Assembly (NCBI GenBank): GCA_002269645.1 | Contig: NIVC01003836.1 | Span: forward strand, 10,536-74,535 | Direction of reading: 5' to 3' | From: Macrostomum lignano | Lineage: Eukaryota | DNA length: 64,000 nucleotides | Shown here: positions 17,790 through 55,341 of the stretch, one piece after another | How the letters are laid out: each line of letters opens with the position of its first letter | Position numbering within the stretch: the first letter of the stretch is position 1 | Made by a program: the position numbers and the translations under genes | The notes under the pieces: generated by a model | Database searches by the model: none | What the model saw: the letters and a program-made list of their open reading frames with translations, nothing else | What the model was told of the DNA's origin: nothing

Positions 17790-18812
17790 GGGGGGGGCGG
17801 TAGCACCGGGGGGCGCTAGCACCGGGGGGCGCTAGCACCGGGGGGCGCTAGCACCGGGGGCGCTAGCACCGGGGGGCGCTAGCACCGGGGGCGCTAGCAC
17901 CGGGGGGCGCTAGCACCGGGGGGCGCTAGCACCGGGGGCGCTAGCACCGGGGGCGCTAGCACCGGGGGGCGCTAGCACCGGGGGGCGCTAGCACCAGGGG
18001 GCGCTAGCACCGGGGGGCGCTAGCACCGGGGGGCGCTAGCACCGGGGGGCGCTAGCACCGGGGGCGCTAGCACCGGGGGCGCTAGCACTGGGGGGCGCTA
18101 GCACCGGGGGCGCTAGCACTGGAGGCGCTAGCACTGGGGGGGCGCTAGCACCGGGGGGCGCTAGCACCGGGGGGCGCTAGCACCGGGGGGCGCTAGCACC
18201 GGGGGGCGCTAGCACCGGGGGGCGCTAGCACCGGGGGGCGCTAGCACCGGGGGGCGCTAGCACCGGGGGGCGCTAGCACTGGGGGGCGCTAGCACCGGGG
18301 GCGCTAGCACTGGAGGCGCTAGCACTGGGGGGGCGCTAGCACCGGGGGGCGCTAGCACTGGAGGCGCTAGCACTGGGGGGCGCTAGCACTGGGGGGCGCT
18401 AGCACTGGGGGGCGCTAGCACCGGGGGCGCTAGCAACGGAGGCGCTAGCACTGGGGGGCGCTAGCACCGGGGGGGGGGCGCTAGCACCGGGGGCGCTAGC
18501 ACCGGGGCGCTAGCACCGGAGGCGCTAGCACTGGGGGGCGCTAGCACCGGGGGCGCTAGCACTGGAGGCGCTAGCACTGGGGGGCGCTAGCACCGGGGGC
18601 GCTAGCACTGGAGGCGCTAGCACTGGGGGGCGCTAGCACTGGGGGGCGCTAGCACTGGGGGGCGCTAGCACCGGGGGCGCTAGCAACGGAGGCGCTAGCA
18701 CTGGGGGCGCTAGCACCGGGGGGGGGCGCTAGCACCGGGGGCGCTAGCACCGGGGCGCTAGCACCGGAGGCGCTAGCACTGGGGGCGCTAGCACCGGGGG
18801 CGCTAGCACCGC
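17790..18812. repeat. G-rich 15-16-bp minisatellite (gctagcaccggggggc)
   Basis: About 60+ units, each with a GCTAGC palindrome and a run of 4-9 G. Confidence 0.95.
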
Positions 18813-18931: not shown

Positions 18932-21900
18932 TCAGCCCACAATGTACTGCTTGTAATTGGACAGCTTCTTCAGCTGCGCCTTGACTGCTCGCACCAGATC
19001 GGTGGGCTGCATCACCAGGCTGATCTCCGGCCCGTGCGCGGACAGCCGGTGCGCCACCTCCTTGGGCTCCGGCCACAGCCTCAGCGGACGGCCGTTGACC
19101 TCTGTCAGCGTCCAGGTGGTGAAATTGGCGTCGTCAAGGACGCCCGCGGTTCGATACGCGAGGCCGTGGGCCGCCGCCAGACCATCCTGGAAGATGCAGT
19201 TTTGTTTGATTGGGATTTGAGAAGATTTGTGGATGAGGCTCGCTTCAGGTGTTTTTGACCATTTGATAATGGGGGTAGAAGTTTAGGTAAGTGGAAGGAG
19301 ACTCAGGTAGGTGGAATGAGACTCAGGTAGGTGGAATGAGACTCAGGTAGTGGAATGAGACTCAGGTAGGTGGAATGAGACTCAGTTAGGTGGAATGAGA
19401 CTCAGGTAGGTGGAATGAGACTCAGGTAGTGGAATGAGACTCAGGTAGGTGGAATGAGACTCAGGTAGTGGAATGAGACTCAGTTAGGTGGAATGAGACT
19501 CAGGTAGGTGGAATGAGACTCAGGTAGGTGGAATGAGACTCAGGTAGTGGAATGAGACTCAGGTAGGTGGAATGAGACTCAGTTAGGTGGAATGAGACTC
19601 AGGTAGGTGGAATGAGACTCAGGTAGGTGGAATGAGACTCAGGTAGGTGGAATGAGACTCAGGTAGGTGGAATGAGACTCAGGTAGGTGGAATGAGACTC
19701 AGTTAGGTGGAATGAGACTCAGGTAGGTGGAATGAGACTCAGGTAGGTGGAATGAGACTCAGGTAGGTGGAATGAGACTCAGTTAGGTGGAATGAGACTC
19801 AGGTAGGTGGAATGAGACTCAGGTAGGTGGAATGAGACTCAGATAGGTGGAATGAGACTCAGGTAGGTGGAATGAGACTCAGGTAGGTGGAATGAGACTC
19901 AGGTAGGTGGAATGAGACTCAGGTAGGTGGAATGAGACTCAGGTAGTGGAATGAGACTCAGGTAGGTGGAATGAGACTCAGGTAGTGGAATGAGACTCAG
20001 GTAGTGGAATGAGACTCAGGTAGTGGAATGAGACTCAGATAGGTGGAATGAGACTCAGGTAGTGGAATGAGACTCAGGTAGGTGGAATGAGACTCAGGTA
20101 GTGGAATGAGACTCAGGTAGTGGAATGAGACTCAGGTAGGTGGAATGAGACTCAGGTAGTGGAATGAGACTCAGGTAGTGGAATGAGACTCAGGTAGTGG
20201 AATGAGACTCAGATAGGTAGAATGAGACTCAGTTAGGTGGAATGAGGCTCAGGTAGTGGAATGAGACTCAGGTAGGTAGAATGAAGCTCAGGTAGGTGGA
20301 ATGAGACTCAGGTAGTGGAATGAGACTCAGGTAGGTGGAATGAGACTCAGGTAGGTGGAATGAGACTCAGGTAGGTGGAATGAGACTCAGGTAGTGGAAT
20401 GAGACTCAGGTAGGTAGAATGAAGCTCAGGTAGTGGAATGAGACTCAGGTAGTGGAATGAGACTCAGGTAGGTGGAATGAGACTCAGGTAGGTGGAATGA
20501 GACTCAGGTAGGTGGAATGAGACTCAGGTAGGTAGAATGAGACTCAAGTAGGTGGAAGGGATTCAAATCCGCCTCACCTGCTGCACGTGGGCCACCTCGG
20601 CCGATTGTCCGGTGGTCACCAGGCCGAGAGAGCGGCCGTCTGGCCGGCTCACGCAGAAGGCCTTGCCATGCGGCAAGCGCCGCAGGCGGAGGGCCACCCG
20701 GCCAACGGAGCCCTGCAGGATTCGGCGGCACTGCTCCAGCGACTCCAGCCGGAAGCCGTCCACGCTCATCACCTGTTGACGGAAGGTGAGCTGGTATTAA
20801 CCGACCAACCAAGTGAGGAGGAAGGAACCGCCAAGGACCGCTGATATTAAGCGGGTCTACGCTAGCTGTGCATTCCGCCGCCGGCTCACCTGGTCGCCAA
20901 CGCGAAGGCAGCCGTGCAGTCGAGTCGCTCGCCGATTCCAGCCAGCGATCCACAGCCTACCAGCGCAGTGGACGATGGCCACATTGTCGAGTAGGTCGGC
21001 AGCGTTGCAGTACACCTGCACGCCACCTGGGTGCAGAATCTGGCGCTTCAACCGTTCGACCGAGGCGCAGAGCGGACTGAGACGCGGCCCGCCGGGACCC
21101 AGGGTGTTCACCACGAACTGGCCGCCCTGGGTCTCCTCGATGCTGATGTCCGCCTGGAGGAAAGGATGGCGGGATGAAAACATTTACTAAGAATCATCCA
21201 GAGTTCTGTGGTGGACCACAAAATAGCTTGGCAAGTTAAGCACTGAAACGTAGCTATCAACACAAATTCTAATTTGAGCAACCCCTAAATTTCACAACCC
21301 CTAAAAACGATTTTGTCGACAAACTGATTAATAGTATTTTTACCGAACTACCCTTTTTCCAGCTTTTCTTATTAAACCAAGTGCTAGAGTCAAGGATTCG
21401 AACCGGGCAAATCCAATTCGAATTTGCGCCAAAAAGTGACGTCGTTAAAAAGTCGTTAAACTCAGAATAGATTTTTTAAATACTACGAGTACACGATGTA
21501 ATTGTAATTTTTGAAGGTACCAGAAATATGCTTAATGATACATGCTTAATACTAATATGAATCCAAGAATTTCTCTTTTTGGCGCCAATTCGAATTGGAT
21601 TAATTTCAGCAAAAACAAAGCCAGATCATGTGCACGCAATCTGTTACCTTTCTATCAAAGAAGCCGGACACCAGCACCGGCTTAGTCAGGTGCTGATAGG
21701 GCGGCGGGTCCGGATTGGGCCGGAACACCCCGACGGCTGACCGAAACCGCCTGGTACGCAGTCGAGTCAGGGCGTCCCAGTCCTCCAGCTCGCGGTATTT
21801 GCTTTCAAGCACGGCGTACGCCTCCGGCTCCATGGCGTCCAGCTCGGCGAACTGAGGATAGGTGTACTCGATGTGAATAATACAATTGCATCGCGCTATT

Positions 21901-25649: not shown

Positions 25650-27111
25650 CTAATCAGTGCCGCTGGTGTTGCAGCTCACGTGGTACCAGGTGATGGCATC
25701 CATCAGGTTCGGGTCCGTGCCCTTCACGCACTGGCAGTCGGCGCCTCTCACCTTCATGGTGGCTCCCGGCTCGTAGAACACATTGCGACCCTCGGCCTCG
25801 TTCCACACCTCGCAGCCATTGAGGCGGCACACCCACTCGGTCTGGTCGCTGCGCCGGCGGCCAAGGATGTAGGCGAAGCCGCACCTGCACAGGTCGTTGC
25901 CGACCGTCTTCTCGGCGCCGTACGTGTCGCACGGCTCACCGCAGCTGGCCACGGCGAACAGGCTGCGGTTTGCGGGGTGGGGGTTAGTGTCTGGTACAGG
26001 ACTTCCATTGTCCCTGTTGGACAGGTGTCTGATACAGCTGACTATCATTGTCATCTGTTGGACAGGTGTCTGGTACAGCTGACTATCATTGTCACCTGTT
26101 GGACAGGTGTCTGATACAGCTGACTATCATTGTCCCCTGTTGGACAGGTGTCTGATACAGCTGACTATCATTGTCACCTGTTGGACAGGTGTCTGATACA
26201 GCTGACTATCATTGTCACCTGTTGGACAGGTGTCTGATACAGCTGACTATCATTGTCACCTGTTGGACAGGTGTCTGATACAGGACTTCCAGTGTCTCCT
26301 GTTCGACAGGTGTCTGATACAGGACTTCCAGTGTCACCTGTTGGACAGGTGTCTGATACAGCTGACTATCATTGTCACCTGTTGGACAGGTGTCTGGTAC
26401 AGCTGACTTCCAGTGTCACTTGTTGGACAGGTGTCTGGTACAGGACTCCAGTGTCACTTGTTGGACAGGTGTCTGGTACAGGACTTCCAGTGTCACCTGT
26501 TGGACAGATGTCTGGTACAGGACTTCCAGTGTCACCTGTTGGACAGGTGTCTGGTACAGCTGACTTCCAGTGTCACTTGTTGGACAGGTGTCTGGTACAG
26601 GACTTCCAGTGTCACCTGTTGGACAGGTGTCTGGTACAGGACTTCCAGTGTCACCTGTTGGACAGGTGTCTGGTACAGCTGACTTCCAGTGTCACTTGTT
26701 GGACAGGTGTCTGGTACAGGACTCCAGTGTCACCTGTTGGACAGGTGTCTGGTACAGGACTTCCAGTGTCACCTGTTGGACAGGTGTCTGGTACAGCTGA
26801 CTTCCAGTGTCACTTGTTGGACAGGTGTCTGGTACAGGACTCCAGTGTCACCTGTTGGACAGATGTCTGATACAGGACTCCCATTGTCACCTGTTGGACA
26901 GGTGTCTGATAAAGGACTCCCACTGTCACCTGTTGGACAGGTGTCTGATACAGCTGACCTCCATTGTCACCTGTTGGACAGGTGTCTGATACAGGTGTCA
27001 GTCCCAGAAGTCCTAGTCACGTCTCCTACTCATCTAAAATCCAACCAGTTAAACAAAAGAAGCTCACCATGTCACCAGGACAGCCGCAGCTCCGAAGGTC
27101 TTGGCAATCAT
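25650..27111 (-). CDS. Small secreted 8-cysteine protein (118 aa), intact copy; two Fn1/VWC-like 4-Cys modules
   Basis: Exons 27068-27111 and 25650-25962 (TG|C, phase 2) give the signal-peptide-like MIAKTFGAAAVLVTCLFAVASC plus a 96-aa mature part. TATAAAA lies about 100 nt upstream of the ATG. Confidence 0.8.
25990..27000. repeat. 39-41-bp hairpin-containing minisatellite, intron of the left copy
   Basis: Each unit contains CACCTGT-tgg-ACAGGTG; most also contain CAGCTG. Confidence 0.93.
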
Positions 27112-27800: not shown

Positions 27801-29469
27801 ATGATTGCCAAGACCTTCGGAGCTGCGGCTGTCCTGGTGACATGGTGAGCTTCTTTTGTTTAACTGGTTGGATTTTAGATGAGTAGGAGACGTGACTAGG
27901 ACTTCTGGGACTGACACCTGTCCAACAGGTGACAATGGAAGTCCTGTATCAGACACCTGTCCAACAGGTGACAATGAAAGTCAGCTGTATCAGACACCTG
28001 TCCAACAGGTGACAATGATAGTCAGCTGTATCAGACACCTGTCCAACAGATGACAATGATAGTCAGCTGTATCAGACACCTGTCCAACAGGTGACAATGA
28101 AAGTCAGCTGTATCAGACACCTGTCCAACAGGTGACAATGGAAGTCAGCTGTATCAGACACCTGTCCAACAGGTGACAATGATAGTCAGCTGTACCAGAC
28201 ACCTGTCCAACAGATGACAATGATAGTCAGCTGTATCAGACACCTGTCCAACAGGTGACAATGATAGTCAGCTGTATCAGACACCTGTCCAACAGGTGAC
28301 AATGATAGTCAGCTGTACCAGACACCTGTCCAACAGATGACAATGATAGTCAGCTGTATCAGACACCTGTCCAACAGATGACAATGATAGTCAGCTGTAC
28401 CAGACACCTGTCCAACAGATGACAATGATAGTCAGCTGTATCAGACACCTGTCCAACAGGTGACAATGATAGTCAGCTGTATCAGACACCTGTCCAACAG
28501 GTGACAATGAAAGTCAGCTGTATCAGACACCTGTCCAACAGGGGACAATGATAGTCAGCTGTATCAGACACCTGTCCAACAGGTGACAATGATAGTCAGC
28601 TGTATCAGACACCTGTCCAACAGGTGACAATGGAAGTCAGCTGTATCAGACACCTGTCCAACAGGTGACACTGGAAGTCCTGTACCAGACACCTGTCCAA
28701 CAGGTGACAATGATAGTCAGCTGTACCAGACACCTGTCCAACAGGTGACAATGAAAGTCAGCTGTATCAGACACCTGTCCAACAGGTGACAATGAAAGTC
28801 AGCTGTATCAGACACCTGTCCAACAGGTGACACTGGAAGTCCTGTATCAGACACCTGTCGAACAGGAGACACTGGAAGTCCTGTATCAGACACCTGTCCA
28901 ACAGGTGACAATGATAGTCAGCTGTATCAGACACCTGTCCAACAGGTGACAATGAAAGTCAGCTGTATCAGACACCTGTCCAACAGGGGACAATGATAGT
29001 CAGCTGTATCAGACACCTGTCCAACAGGTGACAATGATAGTCAGCTGTACCAGACACCTGTCCAACAGATGACAATGATAGTCAGCTGTATCAGACACCT
29101 GTCCAACAGGGGACAATGGAAGTCCTGTACCAGACACTAACCCCCACCCCGCAAACCCGCAGCCTGTTCGCCGTGGCCAGCTGCGGTGAGCCGTGCGACA
29201 CGTACGGCGCGAGAAGACGGTCGGCAACGACCTGTGCAGGTGCGGCTTCGCCTACATCCTTGGCCGCCGGCGCAGCGACCAGACCGAGTGGGTGTGCGCC
29301 TCAATGGCCTGCGAGGTGTCGAGGCCGAGGGTCGCAATGTGTTCTACGAGCCGGGAGCCACCATGAAGGTGAGAGGCGCCGACTGCCAGTGCGTGAAGGC
29401 ACGGACCCGAACCTGATGGATGCCATCACCTGGTACCACGTGAGCTGCAACACCAGCGGCACTGATTAG
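27801..29469 (+). pseudogene. Second copy of the secreted 8-Cys gene, with small deletions (pseudogene or consensus errors)
   Basis: Exons 27801-27844 and 29163-29469. Relative to the left copy it lacks a C in GCC-GAG, a C in TGC-CGC, GGAA in TGG-AAC and a G in AAG-GGC. Confidence 0.65.
27912..29135. repeat. 39-41-bp minisatellite (gacacctgtccaacaggtgacaatgatagtcagctgtatca), intron of the right copy
   Basis: Reverse complement of the 25990-27000 array. Confidence 0.93.
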
Positions 29470-30889: not shown

Positions 30890-33800
30890 CTCCGCTAGCT
30901 CGACCAGGCGTTGCAGAGCCTCCTCGCTGAGGTCAAAGTCCTCCACTACGGACCAGGTGCCCTTCGGCTGAAATCTGACTGGAAAGCTGAACACCACGCC
31001 CTCCGGGATGCCGTACCAGCCTGGGGTTTTTTGCATGGTTCAAAATCATTGTTGAAGCAAGCGAATAAAACTTAAGAAATAAATCATTAGTACAGGAGGG
31101 AGAACTCAGTCACATTGGTACAGGATCAGTGGGAGAACTCAGTCACATTGTACAGGATCAGTGGGAGAACTCAGTCACATTGGTACAGGAACAGGATCAG
31201 GGGAGAACTCAGTCACATTGGTACAGGATCAGTGGGAGAACTCAGTCACATTGGTACAGGATCAGTGGGAGAACTCAGTCACATTGGTACAGGATCAGTG
31301 GGAGAACTCAGTCACATTGGTACAGGATCAGTGGAGAACTCAGTCACATTGGTACAGGATCAGTGGGAGAACTCAGTCACATTGGTACAGGATAAGTGGG
31401 AGAACTCAGTCACATTGGTACAGAAGCCGGAGCAGTGCTCACCCTTGGATGCGATGCCCAGCGAGGTGACGCCGCCTCCGGCCGCCTGTCCGAGCCACCA
31501 ATCTCGTAGGGTGTCGGCCGTGGCCCGGGCGAGGCTGGCCGCAAAGTGTCCGGCCGCCTTGCCGTCGGTCGCCAGAGACTCTCGGCCTGCCGCTTGGCCA
31601 GCAGCCTGGGCAGATCGGTCTGGACCCATTCCTGGTCCCACAACGGCTCGGACAGTGGCCGCTTGTACCAATCTGGCCCGGTCACGGCGCCAGTCTCCTC
31701 GCCGCCCAGGTTGCGCGGTCCAGCTCCGGCCAGTGGCCGCCGGCCGGGTCACCCCAGATGACCAGGTCGCCCACGCATGCCGGATTCACCTCGTAGCGGC
31801 CCTGGCCGAGCCGGGCGGCTACGGCGCCCTTGGCCCAGCGCTCCATCAGGCGCGGAGTGGCGGCCACCCTGTCCGGGTGTGGGGCCGAGGGGCCACCGCC
31901 GCGGGCCCGGCCAGCGCGGACCATTCGAGAAGGACGCGAGCGCCGAAGTTCACCGGGGCGCGGCCGGAGACGAGGATTCTGGGATGGGGTGGTCGGGGTA
32001 TTTGAGCGATGGGAAACTGATCTCTAGTTAGCTGTTAGTGGGGGCCGTAGCCCAGTGATGAGTTAGCGGCCCAGGCTCGATTCCAAGTGCAGTCACCATT
32101 AATTTGAGGCTAAATTGGAATCTCGGCTTGGCTCTGTTCGTGCAATTAACGCCCTGAGGACCAACCCCCAAGGCACAGTGAAGTGTACATGCCTAACGAT
32201 AAATAAATAGGGCCGCTGTACACTCCTGTGTGAGTGTGTGCCTGCTCAGGGGAGTCGGCGGAATGGGCAGTAATGCTCTCCGGTTGTGTGACAATGTCGC
32301 TTAAAGTGCGCCAGGGTGCACATGGCCCTCTGCCTGTGATAACAAAGGAAGCATGCAGCATCATCAGCAGCAGCACCTCCAGCACCGGCTGCGGGCAGTG
32401 CGACTCGACGCGGATGATGCGGCCTGCCAGCTGGAGCCGCCGACGGCAGTTACTAATCCTACAGATTAAAATTACATGTACCTAATGGATTTCAGGTAAC
32501 GTAGTTTAGCAGTGCTCTCACGAATGCGGCGGGCCCGCCGCAGCCAGCCGCCTGGATGGCGGCCGCGTACTCCGCATACAGACTGGCGTAGCGCCTCAGC
32601 CAATGGAGCGAGCCTCGCCCTGATTGGCTGGCGAGTCACCCGACGCTGCTGACTGCGACGGCTCGAGTTCGTCAGCAACACCAGCAGTTCGGCGCCGGCC
32701 AGCGCGTCTGCGAGACTTCGCGTGCATCTGATGGAGCGGACAAGCGGCTGGGCCAGGTCTCGTGACTTCCATGCCAGACCCTTGGTAATTTGAGGAGTGA
32801 GTGTTGAGTTTTTTAAGTTATTTCGTTCACAAATATTTATTTAGGGGCGTAGCCAGGGAGGGGCAAGGGCTGTACTTCCATCTCCCTAACCGGATGGCAA
32901 AGTCTATGGCGCCCCTGGTGCTAAAGCCTCTGGTGCTGGCGCCCCTGGTGCTAAAGGCCTTCAAATTAAATGGCACTCCCTCCCTTAAAAATTCTGGCTA
33001 AGCCCCCATATCATATTAACAAACTAAACGCATTGCGGTATACAAATAGAAAAACAAAATTAATGTGAGTCCAACAAACAATTACGAGTATTTTTGACTT
33101 GCCTTGATTTGTGAATAAAAAATGGAGGTAGCGCAAAGCCAACTTGCATACCATGTTGATGTAATTGCCTCCCGTGTAACAATCAGTCTCAAAAACTGCA
33201 CAGGTTTTTATTGTTGCCATTTTAGCAGTTTCAAGATACTATTTAAAAAAGGTTCATAATTTTTATACCTGGCTTCTAATTAGTATCTCTTCATTCAATG
33301 GATATTGAGATAGACACTTGGGATGTCTTGACAGAAAACTAATTATACCTTATCTTCATATCTCCTGTCTCACCTATCTTTCCCCTAACTCTCCCCTACC
33401 TCTCCCCTATCTCTCCCCTACCTCTCCCCTACATCTCCCCTACCTCTCCCCTACATCTCCTCTACCTCTCCCCTACCTCTCCCCTAACTCTCCCCTACCT
33501 CTCCCCTACATCTCCCCTACCTCTCCCCTACCTCTCCCCTACATCTCCTCTACCTCTCCCCTACCTCTCCCCTAACTCTCCCCTACCTCTCCCCTACATC
33601 TCCCCTACCTCTCCTCTACCTCTCCCCTACCTCTCCCCTACCTCTCCCCTACCTCTCCTCTACCTCTCCCCTACCTCTCCTCTACCTCTCCCCTACCTCT
33701 CCCCTACCTCTCCCCTACATCTCCTCTACCTCTCCCCTACCTCTCCCCTACCTCTCCCCTACCTCTCCCCTACATCTCCCCTACCTCTCCTCTACCTCTC

Positions 33801-36800
33801 CCCTACCTCTCCCCTACCTCTCCCCTAACTCTCCCCTACCTCTCCCCTACCTCTCCCCTATCTCTCCCCTACCTCTCCCCTACATCTCCCCTACATCTCC
33901 CCTACCTCTCCCCTACATCTCCCCTACATCTCCCCTACATCTCCCCTACCTCTCCCCTACATCTCCCCTACATCTCCCCTACATCTCCTCTACCTCTCCC
34001 CTACCTCTCCCCTACCTCTCCCCTATCTCTCCCCTACCTCTCCCCTATCTCTCCCCTACCTCTCCCCTACATCTCCCCTACCTCTCCCCTACATCTCCTC
34101 TACCTCTCCCCTACCTCTCCCCTACCTCTCCCCTACCTCTCCCCTACATCTCCCCTACCTCTCCTCTACCTCTCCCCTACCTCTCCCCTACCTCTCCCCT
34201 AACTCTCCCCTACCTCTCCCCTACCTCTCCCCTATCTCTCCCCTACCTCTCCCCTACATCTCCCCTACATCTCCCCTACCTCTCCCCTACATCTCCCCTA
34301 CATCTCCCCTACATCTCCTCTACCTCTCCCCTACCTCTCCCCTACCTCTCCCCTACATCTCCCCTACCTCTCCCCTACATCTCCCCTACCTCTCCCCTAC
34401 CTCTCCCCTACCTCTCCCCTACATCTCCTCTACCTCTCCCCTACCTCTCCCCTACCTCTCCCCTAACTCTCCCCTACCTCTCCCCTATCTCTCCCCTACC
34501 TCTCCCCTATCTCTCCCCTACCTCTCCCCTACATCTCCCCTACATCTCCCCTACATCTCCTCTACCTCTCCCCTACCTCTCCCCTACCTCTCCCCTACAT
34601 CTCCCCTACCTCTCCCCTACATCTCCCCTACCTCTCCCCTACCTCTCCCCTACCTCTCCCCTACATCTCCTCTACCTCTCCCCTACCTCTCCCCTACCTC
34701 TCCCCTAACTCTCCCCTACCTCTCCCCTATCTCTCCCCTACCTCTCCCCTATCTCTCCCCTACCTCTCCCTTACATCTCCCCTACCTCTCCCCTACTCTC
34801 CCTACCTCTCCCCTACCTCTCCCCTACCTCTCCCCTACCTCTCCCCTACATCTCCCCTACCTCTCCTCTACCTCTCCCCTACCTCTCCCCTACCTCTCCC
34901 CTAACTCTCCCCTACCTCTCCCCTATCTCTCCCCTACCTCTCCCCTACATCTCCCCTACATCTCCCCTACCTCTCCCCTACATCTCCCCTACATCTCCCC
35001 TACCTCTCCCCTACATCTCCTCTACCTCTCCCCTACCTCTCCCCTACATCTCCCCTACCTCTCCCCTACATCTCCCCTACCTCTCCCCTACCTCTCCCCT
35101 ACCTCTCCCCTAACTCTCCCCTACATCTCCCCTATCTCTCCCCTACCTCTCCCCTACATCTCCCCTACATCTCCCCTACATCTCCTCTACCTCTCCCCTA
35201 CCTCTCCCCTACCTCTCCCCTACCTCTCCCCTACCTCTCCCCTACCTCTCCCCTACATCTCCTCTACCTCTCCCCTACCTCTCCCCTACCTCTCCCCTAC
35301 ATCTCCCCTACCTCTCCCCTACATCTCCTCTACCTCTCCCCTACATCTCCCCTACCTCTCCCCTACATCTCCCCTATCTGTCCCCTACCTCTCCCCTACC
35401 TCTCCCTATCTGTCCCTATCTGTCCCCTATATTTCCCTTATCTCTCCCCTATCTCTCCTCTACCTCTCCCCTACCTCTCCCCTACCTCTCCCCTAACTCT
35501 CCCCTACCTCTCCCCTATCTCTCCCCTACCTCTCCCCTATCTCTCCCCTACCTCTCCCCTACATCTCCCCTACCTCTCCCCTACATCTCCTCTACCTCTC
35601 CCCTACCTCTCCCCTACCTCTCCCCTACCTCTCCCCTACATCTCCCCTACCTCTCCTCTACCTCTCCCCTACCTCTCCCCTACCTCTCCCCTAACTCTCC
35701 CCTACCTCTCCCCTATCTCTCCCCTACCTCTCCCCTACATCTCCCCTACATCTCCCCTACCTCTCCCCTACATCTCCCCTACATCTCCCCTACATCTCCT
35801 CTACCTCTCCCCTACCTCTCCCCTACCTCTCCCCTACATCTCCCCTACCTCTCCCCTACATCTCCCCTACCTCTCCCCTACCTCTCCCCTAACTCTCCCC
35901 TACCTCTCCCCTACATCTCCTCTACCTCTCCCCTACCTCTCCCCTACCTCTCCCCTACCTCTCCCCTACATCTCCCCTACCTCTCCTCTACCTCTCCCCT
36001 ACCTCTCCCCTACCTCTCCCCTAACTCTCCCCTACCTCTCCCCTACCTCTCCCCTATCTCTCCCCTACCTCTCCCCTACATCTCCCCTACATCTCCCCTA
36101 CCTCTCCCCTACATCTCCCCTACATCTCCCCTACATCTCCTCTACCTCTCCCCTACCTCTCCCCTACCTCTCCCCTACATCTCCCCTACCTCTCCCCTAC
36201 ATCTCCCCTACCTCTCCCCTACCTCTCCCCTACCTCTCCCCTAACTCTCCCCTACCTCTCCCCTATCTCTCCCCTACCTCTCCCCTACATCTCCCCTACA
36301 TCTCCCCTACATCTCCTCTACCTCTCCCCTACCTCTCCCCTACCTCTCCCCTACCTCTCCCCTACCTCTCCCCTACCTCTCCCCTACATCTCCTCTACCT
36401 CTCCCCTACCTCTCCCCTACCTCTCCCCTACATCTCCCCTACCTCTCCCCTACATCTCCTCTACCTCTCCCCTACATCTCCCCTACCTCTCCCCTACATC
36501 TCCCCTATCTGTCCCCTACCTCTCCCCTACCTCTCCCTATCTGTCCCTATCTGTCCCCTATATTTCCCTTATCTCTCCCCTATCTCTCCCCTTTTTTTAC
36601 CTTATCTCCCCTATCTTTCCCTTATCTCCTCTATCCTTCCGGTTCCCTACCTCTCCCCTCTTTTCCCTCTCTCTCCTCTATCTACGATCTCTCCTCATCT
36701 CTACTCAATCCAATCCCCTCTCCTCCAACCCTCTCTCGCAGACTGCTCACCTCCATCTCATCCGATCCCCGCCTGTCGTACAGGGTGACGGCCAGCTCGG

Positions 36801-47351: not shown

Positions 47352-48977
47352 GGGTCTACGACGTTTGCCTGCGGGACGTTTGCCAGCCGACGTTTGCCTG
47401 CGGGACGTTTGCCAGCCGACATTTGCCAGCCGACGTTTGCCAGCCGACGTTTGCCAGCGGGACGTTTGCCAGCCGACGTTTGCCTGCCGGACGTTTGCCT
47501 GCGGGACGTTTGCCAGCCGACGTTTGCCAGCCGACGGTTGCCAGCCGACATTTGCCCGCCGACGTTTGCCAGCGATACGTTTGCCAGTCGGACGTTTGCC
47601 TGCCGGACGTTTGCCAGCCGACGTTTGCCAGCCGACGTTTGCCTGCCGGAAGTTTGCCAGCCAAAATTTGCTAGCCAATATAAAGCCAGTCAGTGAAAAA
47701 TTTGATACTGAAATATTCGCAGTTTAGCGGTTTGACAAAAACCGTTTTTACTCCAACTTTCTGACGGTTATTCGCATATATACAAGTTTGAAAGCAAAAT
47801 ATATAAATTATGCAATTTATATAGATTTACATCTAATATCCAGTTTAACAACGATTTTCTTTGAATGTGAAAATATTGTTTACTTTTGACAATTTTGTAT
47901 CGTTTTTCCCAGTTTGAGATGTTTGATTTTTGATGTGCGAAAGAAGACGCGCAGATTACAACGGGAATCTCCAGCGATTAAGTTATGAGGCAAACAAAAA
48001 GAGCTGCTGAGCGGTAATTCTGGCTCATATATTTCTCAGTTCATTGGGAGATCCAAAAGTAAGCAAATTGATTCCAATTCTGTTGTATTACTACTCAAGT
48101 AAGCCAGGAAACCGCGATCTCAACGTACATGTGTAGACGAGTCGAATGCGGTACGTTTGTATAGTAAGCTATATAGCTGAATAGCCAGACAAGCCGCCAG
48201 TAACAAGCTAGTAGGATAGCAAGCGCTAGACACTACGTATGCAAAGCTTAGTCATGCCAAGGACTACTAAAGTAGTAGTACGCAGCACTCGAAATCTATG
48301 AAAAATGTTTTGAAGGCCATAGGGAGATAGGAAGTTTTCATCTTTTCAGCACAACAATTGTTATTGCTTTCATACGAGGCAAACCCAATGTTCATCTTTT
48401 GATATGTTGTGCCAAAATCGTTGTTAAACTAGATTTATATATAGTTAGATTTAGATTTTCTTAGATTTTGATTTTCTAGATTTATACTATATTTATATAT
48501 TTTGCTTTCAAACTTGTATACATGCGAATAACCGTCAAAAAGTTGGAGTAAAAACGGTTTTTGTCAAACCGCTAAACTGCGAATATTTCAGTATCAATTT
48601 TTTCACTGACTGGCTTTATATTGGCTAGCAAATTTTGGCTGGCAAACTTCCGGCAGGCAAACGTCGGCTGGCAAACGTCGGCTGGCAAACGTCCGGCAGG
48701 CAAACGTCCGGCAGGCAAACTTCGGCTGACAAACGTCCCGCTGGCAAACGTCGGCTGGCAAACGTCGGCTGGCAAATGTCGGCTGGCAAACGTCCCGCAG
48801 GCAAACGTCCGGCTGGCAAACGTCCGGCAGGCAAACGTCGGCTGGCAAACGTCCGGCAGGCAAACGTCGGCTGGCAAACGTCCCACTGGCAAACGTCGGC
48901 TGGCAAACGTCGGCTGGCAAACGTCCGGCAGGCAAACGTCGGCTGGCAAACGTCCCGCAGGCAAACGTCGCTATCCC
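47352..48977. mobile_element. Mutator-like foldback element (1626 bp) with ~500-bp TIRs built on 14-15-bp subterminal repeats
   Basis: 9-bp TSD GCCCGCAAC at 47343-47351 and 48978-48986. gacgtttgccagcc arrays on the left are inverted on the right. Unique TIR sequence 47650-47860 matches ~48410-48650 inverted. Confidence 0.92.
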
Positions 48978-49104
48978 GCCCGCAACGACTGGGGCGACGC
49001 AAGTGACTCTGGGACGCTTCTTAACCTAGGTACCGTTTTTCATCGGGATGTGTCGGATGAAAGCCCTTTGAACTGTTTTCGTACAAACGGGCGGGGCCCG
49101 AAGT

Positions 49105-49175
49105 CATGAGTGATCAAGCGCGGCGCTCGTATGTGCCAGCGGCCCGGGCTCGATTCCAAGCGCAGTCACAATAAT
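49105..49175 (+). mobile_element. SINE 5' fragment
   Basis: gcgcggcgctcgtatgtgccagcggcccgggctcgattccaagcgcagtcaca matches the SINE head. Confidence 0.7.
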
Positions 49176-50325
49176 TCTGCTCCCACGTCTCTCAATTACA
49201 AACCAATGTGATTTCTTAATTCTCTTCTCATCGATCCACATCCTGACTCGCTTTCGACACGTTTTATACACTTAGGAATAAAATCCAAGAGTTGTAGCTC
49301 GTAAGAAATTTGACAAATTCAAGAATTCCAGAACTAGAAATCTTTACCATGCAGTTTTCTTGAATCTGACTAAATTATAATGTTTAGGTGATTGCGTTTC
49401 TGTCTACTAAACCATCGTAGCATCTATTAGCCAACTGTTAGAAACTACGAGCTATTACAAGCACTTGGATTTTCCGAGAATTATTGAGCCAGCATCGAGA
49501 AGCGTACATTGTTCCCTATTTAAATACGTCTCTTACGTATGAGCTTAGAATAGCTCACGCACTCCCTTCTATAGGAGCGTGTGGATAGAGATTCCAATTT
49601 GTTGGGTGAATCAGAAGGTACTAAGTGAGCTCACCAGACTAAAAAAGGTATTTAAGCCCGCCAGTATCACCCCCGAAGTGCCCCACTTCCATTTATTTTC
49701 AAATTAACATTTGTTCCACATCTTCTTTCGCAATTGCGAGTATGTCGAATCAAGGTGAGTAGCCCAGAAAACTTGATTTAACTACGAGCGTAAATAGTTT
49801 TTCAATTCACTTTTCTATGGGTCAATAAGCTTGTCACCGAACTTTCCTATTGCAGGCTAGAGCGCAGTCGAATCCCTGAAGTGTCCGGCCTGACAGGTTT
49901 GAGTCTGCTGCCGCTGGACCAGATCGATCTGCGGCGCCCAATATGCAGCGGCCACTCAATCTCCAATGCTTGCAAAGCGCCCGACATCGGTTTGGGTTCC
50001 GCCCTGCCGGTCCTGGCACTCGAACCCCCCATCGAGGAAGCTCTGAGAGAGCAGCCGGGACCCCAGTGCGCGGCGCTTGGCCTCTGCACCGGGTTGCTGC
50101 GGGCGGAGTTGGCGGTTCGCGGCGAGCGGGTCACCGCGGATTGTCCCTGGATCCGGGGGCAGTCTGACTCGCCTCAGGCGAGCGGGCCCGTCAATTTTTT
50201 GTCGTCAAATTTTTTTCGGCAAGAATACTGGCGGCCCCACGCAGTCTCCGATTGTCACCATAGGAGTCTGTGACGCGGTAAAACGATGGAGATTTGACGA
50301 CTCTACAGAGCCTTAGCGCTTTGAA

Positions 50326-50850
50326 ATGGTTGATTGTGTGGTGTTGAGCAGCAGCAAGAGCTACATCAGGAGCCTGAGCAGTAGGTACAACTGCATCCAG
50401 GCTGGAACAGTAAGGAGGAGCTTCGGAGACCAGCTAGCGTGCTTCCGCTTCAACTTTGAAGGCGAAGATAGGGAGAGAGATAGAGAGCGAGATGGAATAT
50501 TTTTGTACCACGCTTGGAGCAGAGAGCTGGAGAAAACTGCAGCCAGCATTCGCGTGCGGCTACCGTCAAAAGTGCACAAGTACTGCAGCGTCTACGCTGT
50601 GGCGGTAAGATTCAAAGACCCAGTCCAAGACAATTGGATGGGTTTCCTGGCCGAGATGGAGGACGAGTCTGCGGCAGCGAGGAGCAGCGGCCGCTATCAC
50701 AGATGGGAGAAGCTCGAGGTGCCCGACTGCGGCACTAGCGACCCGATTGTGATCGTCAGCAGCCTATCAGATGCTGATGAGCTGGGCCGAACACGCCCAG
50801 TAATTTATAATTTTTTTAAGGAAAACCCTGTTGTATTTTCTACAGAGTAG
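50326..50850 (+). CDS. Orphan protein A (174 aa), paralogue of 52821-53378
   Basis: Intronless ORF that aligns over about 130 aa with the paralogue (YIR.L..Y.C, ACF.F, YHAW..EL, VHK.C.VYAVAV.FKDP, SSG.YH.WE.L). No family recognised. Confidence 0.8.
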   Translation: MVDCVVLSSSKSYIRSLSSRYNCIQAGTVRRSFGDQLACFRFNFEGEDRERDRERDGIFLYHAWSRELEKTAASIRVRLPSKVHKYCSVYAVAVRFKDPVQDNWMGFLAEMEDESAAARSSGRYHRWEKLEVPDCGTSDPIVIVSSLSDADELGRTRPVIYNFFKENPVVFSTE

Positions 50851-52125
50851 AAGTCAACGTTTTAGCCCTTTAGCATCTGTTATTATTGCGCTCATCGGAG
50901 TATGGGGGGCTCCGGTTTCAGTCCATGCCGTTTTCAAAGTAAGCAACGATTTCCTCGACGTTAATGTCGAGACGGTCTGTTGAATCTTTCTGAATCTGTT
51001 ATACCCTCTGTATTGAATTTACAGATGTGAGTTCACAGTAATTCAAAGTTACACACAATTGTTATAGACTTGTGACAAAGTGTCCCTGTTTGCAATTCAA
51101 AGTGTTCAACTGTGTCGATTCTCGATTTACGAGAAGTTTCACTCGACTTTAACGCAAAGAGCAGAATGTCCTTTATATCAAATCAAGGCACAAAAGCCTG
51201 ATTCTTGATTCTTTTTCAGCGCGTTAAGCGCCCAGACACCATGCTAGATTGCTGGTGTACTTTTTGCAGGTGAAAAAATGCCTGAAATGTATTACTGTCA
51301 CTGACCTGGATACCTATAAAAATGAATTCGCTCTGAGAGCGGCAGGTAATAATGCGCGCCTAATTCAATGCTATTGTGGCTGTGATTCAACAAAACTTGA
51401 CTACTACAAATACAAAAAAGATTCATACTAAGAGATATTTAAAGTTTAAACAAATAATTCTGTTCGACTTTTTAATTCCATGCAAAAAAAACCGGCATTA
51501 ACTTAAAAAATTATTTTGCAAGAAAGGATGACTTTTTAAGAAAACAAACTTGTGAGTGATAGCTAGGGCTAAATTTTTTCGAAGAAAAATCCAAGCTAAC
51601 TTGCATTTCTTGTTAAAGCAAAGGCAGCAATTTACTCGGATTTTCCGAGAAAAATCTTGCCTCCAAGACAGTGTACAAGCGGTCGATTTTCCAGTGTACA
51701 TTTCCGATGCACTCTCTCTCTCTCTCTGCCCCTACTCTTTTGGGTGAACAGTTCAGCTGTGTGGAAAGCATGGAAATGCGTGTGACGTTTCCTCTACGTT
51801 GCTAATCTGTCTCTTCTCTTTTGTGCAGGACCTAACCGTAGTTCACAGTGCGGCCCCGATGTACACGTAGCTTGTATAAAACAAGCAGCGAAAATCCCTG
51901 TTTACTTTTTGCCTTATTTTTCTCTCTGCAGGCGCAGCACAACATGGCTGCGTTTCCAACTCTTGGTAAGTATAGTGCGTTTTGGAATGAAACCTCTTAA
52001 GACACATATGCATATAAAAGCACTATAGCATCTAATATAAGTCAGTTCACTTAACCTACTCATCTTTCATTGACCCATTCCTACAGGCTGAATACAAACT
52101 AGGTCGCAGAGGTGACCGGTCTGAC

Positions 52126-52567
52126 AAGCGGTGACCAAATATGGCGCGCCTGACATCGCCCGCTTTCTCAGCTCCGATCTCTGCGCCGCCGCGCCTATAC
52201 TTCGCATTTGGTTTCTCCGACTGACCCGGAGTCGGCGGAGACGCCCAGAAAGTGCTCAGCTGCGAGCCGACCGCGGCGCGCACGCGCGCGCCCCACCCAC
52301 TACCGGCCAAGACATGGATTGGCAACGGTGGGTGGGGCGCGCGCGCACGCGCCGCAGTCAGCTCACAGCTGCCACTTTCTGGGCGTTTCCGACGACTCTG
52401 GGTTGCTTGTGACGCTTCGCACTCAGTGCGACGACTGATCCCCAGTCGGAGAGGCTGGCTACGGCTCGTCTGAAATCTGAATGGAATGCGCAGGTGAGGA
52501 TGCGGCCGCAGAGATCGGATCTGAGCAAGCGAGGCGCTGTCAGGCGCGCCATATTTGGTGGCCGCTT
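52126..52567. repeat. GC-rich ~440-bp inverted repeat (long imperfect hairpin)
   Basis: ccaaatatggcgcgcctgaca..ctcag.tccgatctctgcg pairs with cgcagagatcgga.ctgag..tgtcaggcgcgccatatttgg. The inner stem closes on an 8-nt loop at 52311-52318. Confidence 0.88.
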
Positions 52568-52820
52568 TCGGGCATGGCCGATCCAAGGTTGCCGCCTGCG
52601 GCGGGCTCGGCCGGGGGCTGTCAAAAAGTTCAGTAGTCAAACTCGAATTTTGGCCAGCTAGCTGGATACTTGATAGACTAGTTAAGGCAACCCCCCGGAT
52701 CGAAGCTCGCACGCCGGACTGGCAAATTCTTGGCGGCCGCCGTCTACAGCCAACAAGATCGGCTCTGAAGGCGGGGAATCCGATGGCGATCAGCTGTATT
52801 CGTGAAGCCAGTAACTCAGC

Positions 52821-53378
52821 ATGTTCCCAATCGTATTAAGCACTAATGAGACCTATATTAGACGACTCGGCGACAAGTACGAGTGCACCTCTGCTGTCCA
52901 AGTGCGCTACTCACTCGATCAGCAAGTTGCATGCTTCCTCTTCCATCTGGACGATGAGGCGAGCGGAGAGCTTAGAAAGGTTCGCATGTACCACGCCTGG
53001 TGCAGCGAGCTGGACAGGAAGACGAAGCCCAACTTTACTGTGCGAGTACCGGCACGAGTGCACAAGCACTGCAAGGTGTACGCCGTGGCTGTCAAGTTCA
53101 AGGACCCGCAGAGCTGGCTAAAGTTTCAGCCGGACATGGAGAGGGACCGTCAGCAGCTGGAAAGCAGCGGCGCCTACCACTGCTGGGAGCTGCTGCCAGA
53201 AGGCAAAGTCTGCAACACGGCATCCAAAGACGAGAAAGATTATCCGTGCCCGATGATAATTGCCGCCATGATTGCCGAGAACTATCAAAGCCTGCGGTTG
53301 GACTTGTACACTGACGCCACTTGTGTATTCGTCCCTTCGTCTGATTCGGTCGATAACAGTAGTATATGCGCGAGTTAG
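52821..53378 (+). CDS. Orphan protein B (185 aa), paralogue of 50326-50850
   Basis: Intronless ORF; in-frame stops upstream fix the ATG; AATAAA at about 53488. Confidence 0.8.
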   Translation: MFPIVLSTNETYIRRLGDKYECTSAVQVRYSLDQQVACFLFHLDDEASGELRKVRMYHAWCSELDRKTKPNFTVRVPARVHKHCKVYAVAVKFKDPQSWLKFQPDMERDRQQLESSGAYHCWELLPEGKVCNTASKDEKDYPCPMIIAAMIAENYQSLRLDLYTDATCVFVPSSDSVDNSSICAS

Positions 53379-53774: not shown

Positions 53775-54545
53775 TCATTCAGACGGAGGGTTACTGACCC
53801 ATCCATTCAGACGGAGGGTTACTGACCCATCCATTCAAACGGAGGGTTACTGACCCATCCATTCAGACGGAGGGTTACTGACCCATCCATTCAAACGGAG
53901 GGTTACTGACCCATCCATTCAAACGGAGGGTTACTGACCCATCCATTCAGACGGAGGGTTACTGACCTATCCATTCAGACGGAGGGTTACTGACCCATCC
54001 ATTCAGACGGAGGGTTACTGACCCATCCATTCAGACGGAGGGTTACTGACCCATCCATTCAGACGGAGGGTTACTGACCCATCCATTCAGACGGAGGGTT
54101 ACTGACCCATCCATTCAGACGGAGGGTTACTGACCCATCCATTCAGACGGAAGGTTACTGACCCATCCATTCAGACGGAGGGTTACTGACCCATCCATTC
54201 ACATTGAGGGTTACTGACCCATCCATTCAGACTGAGGGTTACTGACCCATCTATTCACATTGAGGGTTACTGACCCATCCATTCACATTGAGGGTTACTG
54301 ACCCATCCATTCACATTGAGGGTTACTGACCCATCCATTCAGACGGAGGGTTACTGACCTATCCATTCAGACGGAGGGTTACTGACCCATCCATTCAGAC
54401 GGAGGGTTACTGACCTATCGATTCAGACTGAGGGTTACTGAACTATCCATTCAGACTGAGGGTTACTGACCCATCCATTCAGACTGAGGGTTACTGAACT
54501 ATCCATTCAGACGAAGGGTTACTGACCCATCCATTCAGACGGAGA
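53775..54545. repeat. 28-bp minisatellite (gacggagggttactgacccatccattca)
   Basis: About 27 contiguous units, each with a GGGT-tactg-ACCC mini-hairpin; no spacers. Confidence 0.95.
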
Positions 54546-54656
54546 GTTGCTGACCTAAAAATGATATATTGACCAGCGATAGACATAATGCAGTTGAAAT
54601 GAAAACAATGGAAAGCATGGATCACAGGGAAATCAATATCAGCTGACGCTCGCGCA

Positions 54657-55127
54657 TCACAGCTTGTCGTCCCGATGCCGCCAGGAGTCCTCAACAATGC
54701 GGCTCACCCGCTCAGTGTACTCCCGACAGTTATTGGTGAGCAGCTCCGCTGCGGCCATGTTGGCTGGCGAGTGTGGATTCGGATCGCCTAGCAACGACTG
54801 CAGGGAGGTCAGCACGGCGCGTACATCGTATGAGGTGCTCCATTGGTTCTGCAGGATGTCCAAGCAGATGGAGCCGTCAGCGTACACATTCGGATGGAAC
54901 ATGGAGGTGAGAAACTTCACGGCTGGCGGCTTGTTCGGATACTCCTCAGTGAAGGTCATGCTGAGCTTGAACACTCCGCCTTCGAATGCGGTGTCGTCTG
55001 GCCCGAGAATGACCGCCTTCCACACCATGATGTTCTCGTCGGTGGGGCAGGCACCAACGCCTGGCGGCGGGTCCTTCTGCATCATCTGTAGGTCTTTCAT
55101 TAGGCGACGCCGGGCGGCTGTTGACAT
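54657..55127 (-). CDS. UBE2A: Divergent Rad6/UBE2A-B-like ubiquitin-conjugating enzyme, intronless CDS (156 aa)
   Basis: [38 protein letters not shown] with the catalytic Cys intact, NPHSPAN. A splice-acceptor-like tract sits just upstream of the ATG. Orthology to the main Rad6 gene is not established. Confidence 0.9.
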
Positions 55128-55341
55128 GACTCTGGCTGGAGTTTGAGCAAGCCAAATAAAGTGAGTCTTTTGTAATGTCAGAAACTTCTGATTCACTGTC
55201 ATCATGGCTACAGCTGCAGATCATATAACTATTGTATCTGTGGAAAATAGTAATTGCTCTTTTGTTGGTTACCACCATAGAAAAATAAAACTAAATACTA
55301 GCTATAACAGAATCTATTTACATATGGTGAACTGATTAATA

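What the first reader, a model, noticed from the sequence alone, without database searches (positions are those of the whole stretch)
50326..53378. Tandem pair of orphan ~180-aa proteins with a strongly conserved His/Cys/Trp core: candidate undescribed family
Seen: two single-exon ORFs 2 kb apart align co-linearly. They share VLS..YIR.L..Y.C, Q.ACF.F, YHAW..EL, VR.P..VHK.C.VYAVAV.FKDP (14 of 17 identical in VHKYCSVYAVAVRFKDP / VHKHCKVYAVAVKFKDP), W..F...ME and SSG.YH.WE.L, while their flanking DNA is unalignable, so the protein is under constraint. There is no signal peptide or TM segment, and I recognise no domain. Inference: three invariant His plus three Cys could form a catalytic or metal-binding site. 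The pair sits tail-to-tail with an atypical intronless Rad6-like E2, which may be chance or a co-duplicated module.
Basis: partly seen in the sequence, partly recalled or inferred. Interest (0 to 1): 0.75.

Follow-up and report, generated by a model that had tools for sequence, protein, structure and literature searches.

The report
Flatworm-only orphan gene pair
Two neighbouring genes of the flatworm Macrostomum lignano encode related, selectively constrained ~20 kDa proteins with no detectable relative outside this lineage, which makes them a real but unremarkable orphan family in a genome where about a third of protein families are lineage-specific.

Summary
ORFs 50326-50850 (174 aa, g1) and 52821-53378 (185 aa, g2) are co-linear paralogues: 41% identity, E=1e-36. 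DNA similarity is confined to the coding sequence.

The window is Macrostomum lignano. Both genes are already GenBank 'hypothetical proteins' from a transcript-derived annotation. The arrangement Arf - g1 - g2 - Rad6-type E2 - annexin recurs on two other ~95-97% identical contigs.

A full HMMER profile search of 1.84 billion cluster representatives found only the M. lignano copies and one more member. That member is P0004 (184 aa), from two sequencing-run assemblies of unknown organism. Pfam, PDB sequences, PHROGs, NCBIfam and Foldseek gave nothing, and the AlphaFold models are poor (pLDDT 43-49).

dN/dS is 0.14-0.44, which indicates purifying selection.

New here:
- The ~125-aa core looks like an internal duplication of a ~60-aa unit (0 of 300 shuffles reach the observed score).
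- Only two Cys and three His are invariant once P0004 is added.
- g2 and P0004 share a conserved, self-complementary ~270-nt 5' leader with an upstream ATG.

No link to the E2 was found. Function is unknown. A pseudo-symmetric Cys/His metal site is my best guess and is weakly supported. Interest is low to moderate.

The parts
50326..50850 (+). g1: intronless CDS, 174 aa, paralogue 1 of the orphan family (includes a low-complexity EGEDRERDRERDG insert)
   Evidence: ORF. 41% identical to g2, E=1e-36. The identical protein is annotated on contig NIVC01001858 and a 170-aa variant, PAA48141.1 / BOX15_Mlig014382g3, on NIVC01004224. dN/dS against the L002 copy is 0.44.
52821..53378 (+). g2: intronless CDS, 185 aa, paralogue 2. 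It shares a C-terminal tail (MI.A..IAE.Y...RLDLY....CVF) with P0004.
   Evidence: ORF. 99% identical to BOX15_Mlig021735g1. 46% identical to P0004. dN/dS is 0.17 against the L001 copy and 0.14 against P0004.
52878..53000 (+). N-terminal repeat unit of the g2 core (about residues 20-60: Y.C..A..V(R/K)...F.F..D.E...YH.W)
   Evidence: hhalign of the N-half profile against the C-half profile: 41 columns, score 17.8-17.9, P=0.005. 0 of 300 column shuffles reach that score (mean 9.3, sd 1.9, max 17.4).
53064..53189 (+). C-terminal repeat unit of the g2 core (about residues 82-123: KHC..AVAVKFKDP...F..DME...YHCWE)
   Evidence: Same tests. This is the best-conserved stretch of the family.
52552..52820 (+). 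Conserved, self-complementary 5' leader or promoter region of g2, with an upstream ATG at 52784 (37 nt before the start codon)
   Evidence: The global alignment with the region upstream of the P0004 gene scores z=33 over shuffles, whereas the 3' flanks give z=0.5 (alignment). The two best-conserved blocks pair with each other. Independent MFE folds give the same Y-shaped structure. Alifold finds 4 compensatory pairs. No Rfam match.
50267..50294 (+). Short motif upstream of g1 (TCTGTGACGCGGTAAAACGATGGAGATT) resembling the 3' end of the g2/P0004 leader, with an upstream ATG at -40
   Evidence: Sensitive blastn alignment of L003 207-262 with window 50267-50325. This is a weak similarity seen by eye within an alignment dominated by the CDS.

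Best explanation
g1 and g2 are two tandemly duplicated, intronless, transcribed protein-coding genes of a taxonomically restricted (orphan) family. The family is known so far only from Macrostomum lignano and one unidentified, presumably related organism.

Shown: they encode soluble, mildly acidic ~20-21 kDa proteins without signal peptide or membrane segment, kept by purifying selection.

Supported but not proven: the ~125-residue conserved core arose by internal duplication of a ~60-residue alpha/beta unit. Each unit carries a Cys-proximal strand (A..V(R/K)), an F..D.E segment and a YH.W strand.

Inferred (weak): the two units pack pseudo-symmetrically. The equivalent residues C22/C84, H58/H120 and W60/W122, plus H81, line a single interface site, most likely a structural or regulatory metal (Zn) site. 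On this reading the protein is an intracellular binding module rather than a secreted factor.

The duplication into g1 and g2 is old (synonymous sites are saturated) and predates the split between g2 and P0004. Expression of the g2 lineage is probably controlled through a conserved structured 5' region containing an upstream ATG. The neighbouring Rad6-type E2 is an unrelated gene.
For: - Real paralogues: E=1e-36, and similarity is confined to the CDS.
- Organism and prior annotation: P0001 is 99% identical and equals BOX15_Mlig021735g1. The GenBank annotation of this assembly was derived from a transcriptome assembly with expression filters (PMC5730564).
- Restricted distribution: a profile HMM against 1.84e9 representatives gives 3 hits, all family members. 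The word-indexed search of 5.8e9 proteins gives 5 clusters only.
- No known domain: Pfam, PDB, PHROGs and NCBIfam gave no significant match (best Pfam E=0.01 in a single member, far below threshold).
- Purifying selection: omega is 0.33 (g1/g2), 0.14 (g2/P0004), and 0.44 and 0.17 between homeologous copies.
- Soluble: maximum hydropathy window below 1, pI 5.9-6.3.
- Internal repeat: hhalign P=0.005 and 0/300 shuffles.
- Invariant polar residues include C22, H58, H81, C84, H120.
- Low copy number and stable synteny on three contigs.
Against: - Function is not tested by anything here.
- The AlphaFold models are low confidence (pLDDT 43 and 49, pTM 0.40-0.49). Their secondary structure is not symmetric between the halves, so neither the pseudo-symmetric packing nor the proximity of the Cys/His residues is shown.
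- The boundary between the halves was chosen after seeing the repeated YH.W motif. hhalign places the two Cys one column out of register.
- Only three independent sequences define 'invariant' positions.
- Amino-acid differences between homeologous copies do not significantly avoid invariant columns: 1 of 10 against 3 expected.
- Expression evidence is indirect. The gene identifiers were not found in the held supplementary tables of three expression papers; a fourth had no supplements held as text.
- The organism of P0004 is unknown.
Confidence: 0.55

Rival explanations
1. The family is a highly diverged member of an already known fold or superfamily, for example a tandem pair of small ferredoxin-like beta-alpha-beta units or another duplicated alpha/beta barrel. 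Its relationship is simply invisible to sequence methods with only three sequences available.
For: The predicted order of elements is beta-alpha-beta-beta-(alpha)-beta, twice. The internal duplication has statistical support. Such duplicated small alpha/beta units are common in known superfamilies (my own knowledge, not tested).
Against: No Pfam or PDB sequence hit even at E<=10. Foldseek against PDB and BFVD gives a best E of about 1 with TM-scores of 0.1-0.2, although the query model is too poor for that to count as evidence of absence.
Confidence: 0.3
2. The conserved Cys/His residues form a catalytic site, and the protein is a small intracellular thiol- or His-dependent enzyme such as a hydrolase or transferase.
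For: Invariant C22, C84, H58, H81, H120 and acidic D95, E107, E123. The H81-x-x-C84 motif lies in the most conserved segment.
Against: No similarity to any Cys/His enzyme family. The His residues sit in aromatic YH.W strands that look structural. The equivalence of Cys and His between repeat halves fits a symmetric ligand set better than a single catalytic dyad. Nothing tests activity.
Confidence: 0.12
3. The genes are remnants or domesticated copies of a mobile-element or viral accessory gene.
For: Both genes are intronless in a genome averaging about 5 introns per gene. The locus is packed with tandem arrays. A 442-bp nested foldback lies immediately upstream of g2.
Against: Only five 90%-identity clusters exist among 5.8e9 proteins, whereas a mobile-element protein would be multi-copy. 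No transposase, integrase or viral domain is present. No viral structural match. No terminal repeats bracket the genes. Synteny is stable on three contigs. The deposited annotation excluded transcripts overlapping repeats.
Confidence: 0.05
4. The ORFs are not translated: chance or decaying ORFs in non-coding transcripts.
For: One homeologous copy of g2 (L002) carries a 1-nt deletion in a GGG run that truncates the protein to 144 aa. No direct expression or proteomic evidence was retrieved.
Against: Protein-level similarity of E=1e-36 persists after synonymous saturation, with omega 0.14-0.33. Reading frames are intact in the window, in L001, and in the distant P0004 gene from two samples. The frameshift may be a long-read homopolymer error or the loss of one redundant homeolog.
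Confidence: 0.03

Closest known systems
Macrostomum-specific / flatworm-specific orphan gene families (e.g. the Mlig-sperm1 family, PMC5816591)
   Same: Restricted to free-living flatworms or to Macrostomum, with no Pfam domain and annotated only as hypothetical proteins. It belongs to the ~35% of M. lignano protein clusters with no homologue in human, planarian or schistosome.
   Different: No sequence comparison with Mlig-sperm1 was made. No expression site or knock-down phenotype is known for g1/g2. This family is very small: two paralogues per haploid set plus one outside member.
Small proteins built by internal duplication of an alpha/beta half-domain (pseudo-dimeric barrels or sandwiches, e.g. 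duplicated ferredoxin-like or beta-beta-alpha-beta units)
   Same: Two co-linear ~60-residue units with equivalent hydrophobic and aromatic positions and equivalent Cys/His/Trp. Predicted mixed alpha/beta secondary structure.
   Different: Membership of any such superfamily is untested, because there is no sequence or structural match. The resemblance is a lead from my own knowledge, not a result.
Cys/His zinc-binding modules
   Same: Five invariant Cys/His residues, including an H-x-x-C pair (H81, C84).
   Different: Ligand spacing (C22 ... H58 ... H81-x2-C84 ... H120) matches no zinc-finger signature in Pfam. The ligands are spread over 100 residues embedded in predicted strands, unlike compact zinc fingers. 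Metal binding is untested.
UBC/E2 (the adjacent Rad6-type gene, window 54657-55133, minus strand)
   Same: Genomic neighbour in convergent orientation, of similar size and also intronless.
   Different: No profile similarity (hhalign P=0.55). No HPN-Cys active-site motif in g1/g2. The E2 is a conventional UBE2A/B homologue.

Membership tests
Any Pfam-A family | HMM match at or above the family's gathering score | tested here: not met
   All five members were scanned at E<=10. The best hits were SutA-RBD at E=0.39 (10.6 bits against a cutoff of 29.3) and DUF6901 at E=0.01 in one member only.
Taxonomically restricted (orphan) gene family | No detectable homologue outside a narrow lineage in an exhaustive search | tested here: met
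   hmmsearch of 1.84e9 representatives gave 3 hits, all family members. The search of 5.8e9 proteins gave 5 clusters. The PDB profile search gave 0 hits. The organism of P0004 is unknown, so the breadth of the lineage is uncertain.
Taxonomically restricted (orphan) gene family | Evidence that the ORF is a protein-coding gene under selection | tested here: met
   Paralogue similarity E=1e-36 with saturated dS. Omega is 0.14-0.44 in four comparisons.
Taxonomically restricted (orphan) gene family | Transcription | tested here: inconclusive
   The deposited gene models come from a transcript-based annotation pipeline (PMC5730564; locus tags). No read-level or tissue data could be retrieved.
UBC / E2-like fold (neighbouring gene) | Sequence or profile similarity to the UBC core; HPN...C active site | tested here: not met
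   hhalign of the family profile against the adjacent E2 gave P=0.55 over 12 columns. No UQ_con or RWD hit in Pfam.
Transposon- or virus-derived protein | Mobile-element or viral domain, high copy number, bracketing terminal repeats | tested here: not met
   No Pfam or PHROG hit. No BFVD structural match. The family is low-copy. No other copy exists in the 64-kb window. The foldback at 52126-52567 lies upstream of g2 only and does not bracket the gene.
Zinc-binding Cys/His domain | Four conserved ligands brought together in space; bound metal | not testable with these tools
   Five invariant Cys/His exist. The models have pLDDT below 50 and coordinates cannot be inspected. Testing needs metal analysis or a structure.
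Internally duplicated two-unit domain | Significant co-linear similarity between the two halves | tested here: met
   hhalign P=0.005. 0 of 300 column-shuffled controls reach the score, z about 4.4. Caveat: the split point was chosen after inspection.

The most novel reading that the evidence does not exclude
The core is a new protein domain that arose within macrostomid flatworms by internal duplication of a ~60-residue unit. It creates a previously undescribed pseudo-symmetric Cys2His2(+His) metal or catalytic site. The g2 lineage is additionally controlled by a conserved ~230-nt structured 5' leader with an embedded upstream ATG, which would be a new cis-regulatory RNA element.
Probability: 0.12. 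Interest if true: 0.5.

Novelty: new member of a known kind. Interest (0 to 1): 0.25.

Why it matters
If the family proves to be a new fold, it would be a compact example of how a lineage-specific domain is built by internal duplication and then fixed by gene duplication. It sits in a flatworm model where RNAi and transgenesis are available to test function. The conserved, self-pairing 5' leader with an upstream ATG would be a tractable case of translational or transcriptional control in Macrostomum. On present evidence, though, it is one of roughly ten thousand lineage-specific protein clusters in this species (PMC5816591). It has no phenotype, no expression pattern and no link to the adjacent ubiquitin-conjugating enzyme, so its immediate significance is modest.

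Tried and rejected
- **Known domain:** Pfam on all members at E<=10, PHROGs and NCBIfam gave nothing usable.
- **Solved relatives:** phmmer and a profile hmmsearch against PDB sequences gave nothing.
- **Structure route:** two AlphaFold2 runs (2-sequence and 5-sequence alignments) gave pLDDT 43 and 49. Foldseek against PDB and BFVD gave a best E of about 1 and TM of 0.2 or less, which is uninformative. Scattered Rep/NS1 hits in BFVD at E=1-7 were considered (HUH endonuclease idea) and rejected. There is no HUH or conserved Y..K motif: the candidate Tyr is His in g2 and in P0004.
- **Relation to the neighbouring E2:** rejected.
- **Extra copies in the window:** none.
- **The conserved upstream blocks as a protein-coding extension:** rejected. 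An indel shifts the frame between g2 and P0004, and the upstream ATG runs into a stop or overlaps the main ORF out of frame (sequence).
- **The upstream region as a known RNA:** no Rfam hit at E<=1. The conserved blocks are unique in the window.
- **Do homeolog amino-acid differences avoid invariant columns?** Not significant: 1 of 10 against 3 expected.
- **Expression and phenotype look-ups:** no hits for the locus identifiers in full texts or in the held supplements of three Macrostomum papers; a fourth paper had no supplements held as text.
- **Identity of the runs SRR28338163 and SRR28338165:** not found in the paper library.
Full report
**1. Observation**

The two ORFs exist exactly as described: 50326-50850 (174 aa, here g1) and 52821-53378 (185 aa, here g2), both on the + strand.
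- BLASTP aligns them co-linearly over 155 residues: 41% identity, 59% positives, E=1e-36.
- tblastn finds no further copy in the 64-kb window.
- Sensitive blastn between the two loci with about 1 kb of flank on each side aligns only 122 nt inside the coding sequence.
- Global alignment of the 270-nt 5' and 3' flanks of g1 and g2 scores no better than shuffled sequence.
- Hydropathy shows no signal peptide or membrane segment. The proteins are about 20-21 kDa with pI about 6.

**2. Where this is and what is already on record**

- g2 is 99% identical to GenBank 'hypothetical protein BOX15_Mlig021735g1 [Macrostomum lignano]'.
- g1 matches a protein in the same assembly. A 170-aa variant is PAA48141.1 / BOX15_Mlig014382g3.
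- Two other contigs of assembly GCA_002269645.1 carry the same gene order: Arf GTPase - g1 - g2 - UQ_con E2 (opposite strand) - annexin. They are 95-97% identical to the window across coding and non-coding DNA. They are therefore homeologous or allelic copies of one locus, not independent evidence of linkage.
- The GenBank annotation of this assembly was produced from a genome-guided transcriptome assembly, filtered for expression and against repeats (PMC5730564). Both genes therefore have indirect transcript support.
- I could not retrieve tissue or read-level data. The identifiers do not occur in the searchable literature or in the held supplements I checked.

**3. Distribution**

- A profile of g1+g2 searched with HMMER against 1.84 billion cluster representatives returned three proteins at E<=0.001, all at E<1e-40:
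  - the homeologous g1 copy;
  - a frameshifted g2 copy;
  - P0004, a 184-aa protein found only on two ~1.1-kb contigs assembled from sequencing runs SRR28338163 and SRR28338165.
- A second, word-indexed search of 5.8 billion proteins with a four-sequence profile added nothing.
- P0004 is 46% identical to g2 and about 40% identical to g1. It shares g2's C-terminal tail, so it belongs to the g2 lineage, and the g1/g2 duplication is older than the g2/P0004 split.
- The organism of those runs could not be established. I presume another macrostomid.
- The family is thus tiny and lineage-restricted.

**4. Is it a known domain?**

No.
- Pfam on every member at E<=10, PHROGs and NCBIfam gave no meaningful hit.
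- PDB sequence searches with one protein and with the family profile gave no meaningful hit.
- AlphaFold2 with the shallow alignments available gave low-confidence models: pLDDT 42.8 and 49.4, pTM 0.40 and 0.49.
- Foldseek of the better model against PDB and BFVD returned only noise: best E about 1, TM 0.1-0.2. With such a model, this is absence of evidence only.

**5. Selection**

Nei-Gojobori estimates on codon alignments:

| Comparison | Result |
|---|---|
| g1 vs g2 | omega 0.33, dS 1.67 (saturated) |
| g2 vs P0004 | omega 0.14, pS 0.74 (saturated) |
| g1 window vs L002 | omega 0.44 (10 nonsynonymous, 6 synonymous differences) |
| g2 window vs L001 | omega 0.17 (2 nonsynonymous, 3 synonymous) |

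- One homeologous g2 copy (L002) has a 1-nt deletion in a GGG run that truncates the protein. This could be a long-read homopolymer error or the loss of a redundant copy.
- Amino-acid differences between homeologs do not significantly avoid invariant columns: 1 of 10 against 3 expected. That test is uninformative.

**6. Anatomy of the protein**

- With three independent sequences, 44 of 148 aligned columns are invariant. Most are hydrophobic or aromatic.
- The invariant polar ones include R14, C22, H58, R75, H81, K82, C84, K94, D95, E107, H120 and E123.
- The motif YH.W occurs twice (57-60 and 119-122), each preceded about 35 residues earlier by a Cys-proximal A..V(R/K) strand.
- I therefore split the core at residue 66/67 and compared profiles of the halves. 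hhalign aligns 41 columns co-linearly with P=0.005. None of 300 column-shuffled controls reaches the observed score: 17.8 against a mean of 9.3, sd 1.9, max 17.4.
- I read this as an internal duplication of a ~60-residue alpha/beta unit, with C22~C84 (one column out of register in the hhalign alignment), H58~H120 and W60~W122.
- Caveats: the split point was chosen after inspection, and the AlphaFold secondary structure is not symmetric between the halves.

**7. Mechanism**

- Shown: a soluble, non-secreted, constrained protein.
- Supported: a two-unit internally duplicated core.
- Inferred: the equivalent Cys/His pairs, plus H81 in an H-x-x-C motif, form one site at the interface of the two units. 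I consider a structural or regulatory metal (Zn) site most likely, and a catalytic Cys/His site second. Neither can be tested with the tools at hand.
- A transposon or viral origin is unlikely given the low copy number, the absence of any mobile-element domain, and stable synteny.

**8. The E2 neighbour**

- The ORF at 54657-55205 (minus strand, annotated from Met25 as 158 aa) is a conventional UBE2A/B (Rad6) homologue: UQ_con at E=3e-50, and E=7e-68 to human UBE2A.
- It is convergent with g2, separated from it by a 28-bp x 28 tandem array.
- It has no profile similarity to the family, and there is one E2 for two paralogues. Nothing supports a functional or co-duplicated module.

**9. Unexpected finding upstream of g2**

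- Synonymous sites between g2 and the P0004 gene are saturated and their 3' flanks are unalignable (z=0.5). Even so, the ~270 nt upstream of the two start codons align with z=33.
- The two most conserved blocks are complementary to each other: 52570-52595 and about 52718-52740.
- Independent MFE predictions for the two sequences give the same Y-shaped structure: an outer helix, a ~20-bp long-range helix and a second hairpin (z -2.9 and -2.0).
- The alignment fold shows four compensatory pairs. With only two independent sequences, that is suggestive and not proof.
- The 3' end of the element contains an upstream ATG in the conserved context CCGATGGCGA, at -37 in g2 and -38 in P0004. A related motif with an ATG at -40 lies upstream of g1.
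- The blocks are not protein-coding, because the frame shifts between the species. They are unique in the window and match no Rfam family.
- Whether this is a 5' UTR structure with a regulatory upstream ORF or a promoter element cannot be decided without transcript-end data.
- Directly 5' of it lies a 442-bp nested foldback at 52126-52567.

**10. Comparison with what is known, and verdict**

- The closest known category is the large class of Macrostomum- or flatworm-specific genes. According to PMC5816591, 35% of M. lignano protein clusters (10,499) have no homologue in human, planarian or schistosome, and the Mlig-sperm1 family is a characterised example.
- g1/g2 is a new, small member of that class. 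It is already deposited as hypothetical proteins and is undescribed as a family.
- It passes the tests for a genuine orphan gene family. It fails every test for membership of a known protein family, of the E2 fold, or of mobile-element proteins.
The implied significance (0.75) is too high: nothing here would surprise a flatworm genomicist, and no open question becomes testable.
- The internal duplication and the conserved structured leader are modest points of added interest. I score overall interest at 0.25.

Noticed in passing
window 52552-52820 (and L003 1-262, L004 132-393): The ~270-nt region upstream of g2 is strongly conserved with the region upstream of the P0004 gene (z=33), although synonymous sites are saturated and the 3' flanks are unalignable. 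The conserved blocks pair with each other in a shared Y-shaped fold that contains an upstream ATG at -37/-38. No Rfam match.
   Followed up: partly
window 52126-52567: A 442-bp nested foldback (inverted repeats of 35, 25, 31 and 44 nt, 89-92% complementary) lies immediately 5' of the conserved g2 leader. It may be a MITE-like or palindromic element. Its right arm shows weak similarity to L004 1-131 (z=3.5).
   Followed up: partly
window 54657-55205 (-): An intronless UBE2A/B (Rad6)-type E2 (E=7e-68 to human UBE2A). The longest ORF starts 24 codons upstream of the annotated Met (MSTAARRRL...). It is convergent with g2.
   Followed up: yes
window 53776-54555: A 28-bp unit repeated about 28 times (94% matches) fills most of the g2-E2 intergenic space. 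Copy number appears to differ between the homeologous contigs L001 and L002.
   Followed up: no
L002 3285-3719 (equivalent to window 53143-53145): One homeologous g2 copy has a 1-nt deletion in a GGG run, giving the truncated 144-aa annotated protein BOX15_Mlig031984g2. It is either a pseudogenised homeolog or a long-read homopolymer error.
   Followed up: partly
window 33368-36592: An 11-bp unit (TCTCCCCTACC) repeated about 294 times gives a GC skew near -1 over 3 kb.
   Followed up: no
window 47359-47676 and 48623-48970: Two arrays of the same 14-bp unit in opposite orientation (CGACGTTTGCCAGC / GGCTGGCAAACGTC), about 1 kb apart, form a large inverted pair of tandem arrays. They generate the spurious overlapping ORFs listed at 48572-49109.
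   Followed up: no
window 1-32000: At least 15 further tandem arrays of 14-43-bp units, each 0.3-1.3 kb long (for example 17792-18811, 19285-20557, 25987-26995, 27913-29137), so the window is very repeat-rich. Several long ORFs there are likely repeat artefacts.
   Followed up: no
window 50060-50330: The GC-rich region upstream of g1 is also predicted to be unusually structured (MFE -124.8 kcal/mol, z=-3.7). Its architecture differs from that of the g2 leader.
   Followed up: no
L002 760-1284: The annotated g1 protein on this contig (P0003, 170 aa) lacks 4 residues of the EDRERDRERD low-complexity run, although the genomic ORF there is uninterrupted (174 aa). This suggests transcript-level length variation or a micro-'intron' call in the annotation.
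   Followed up: no
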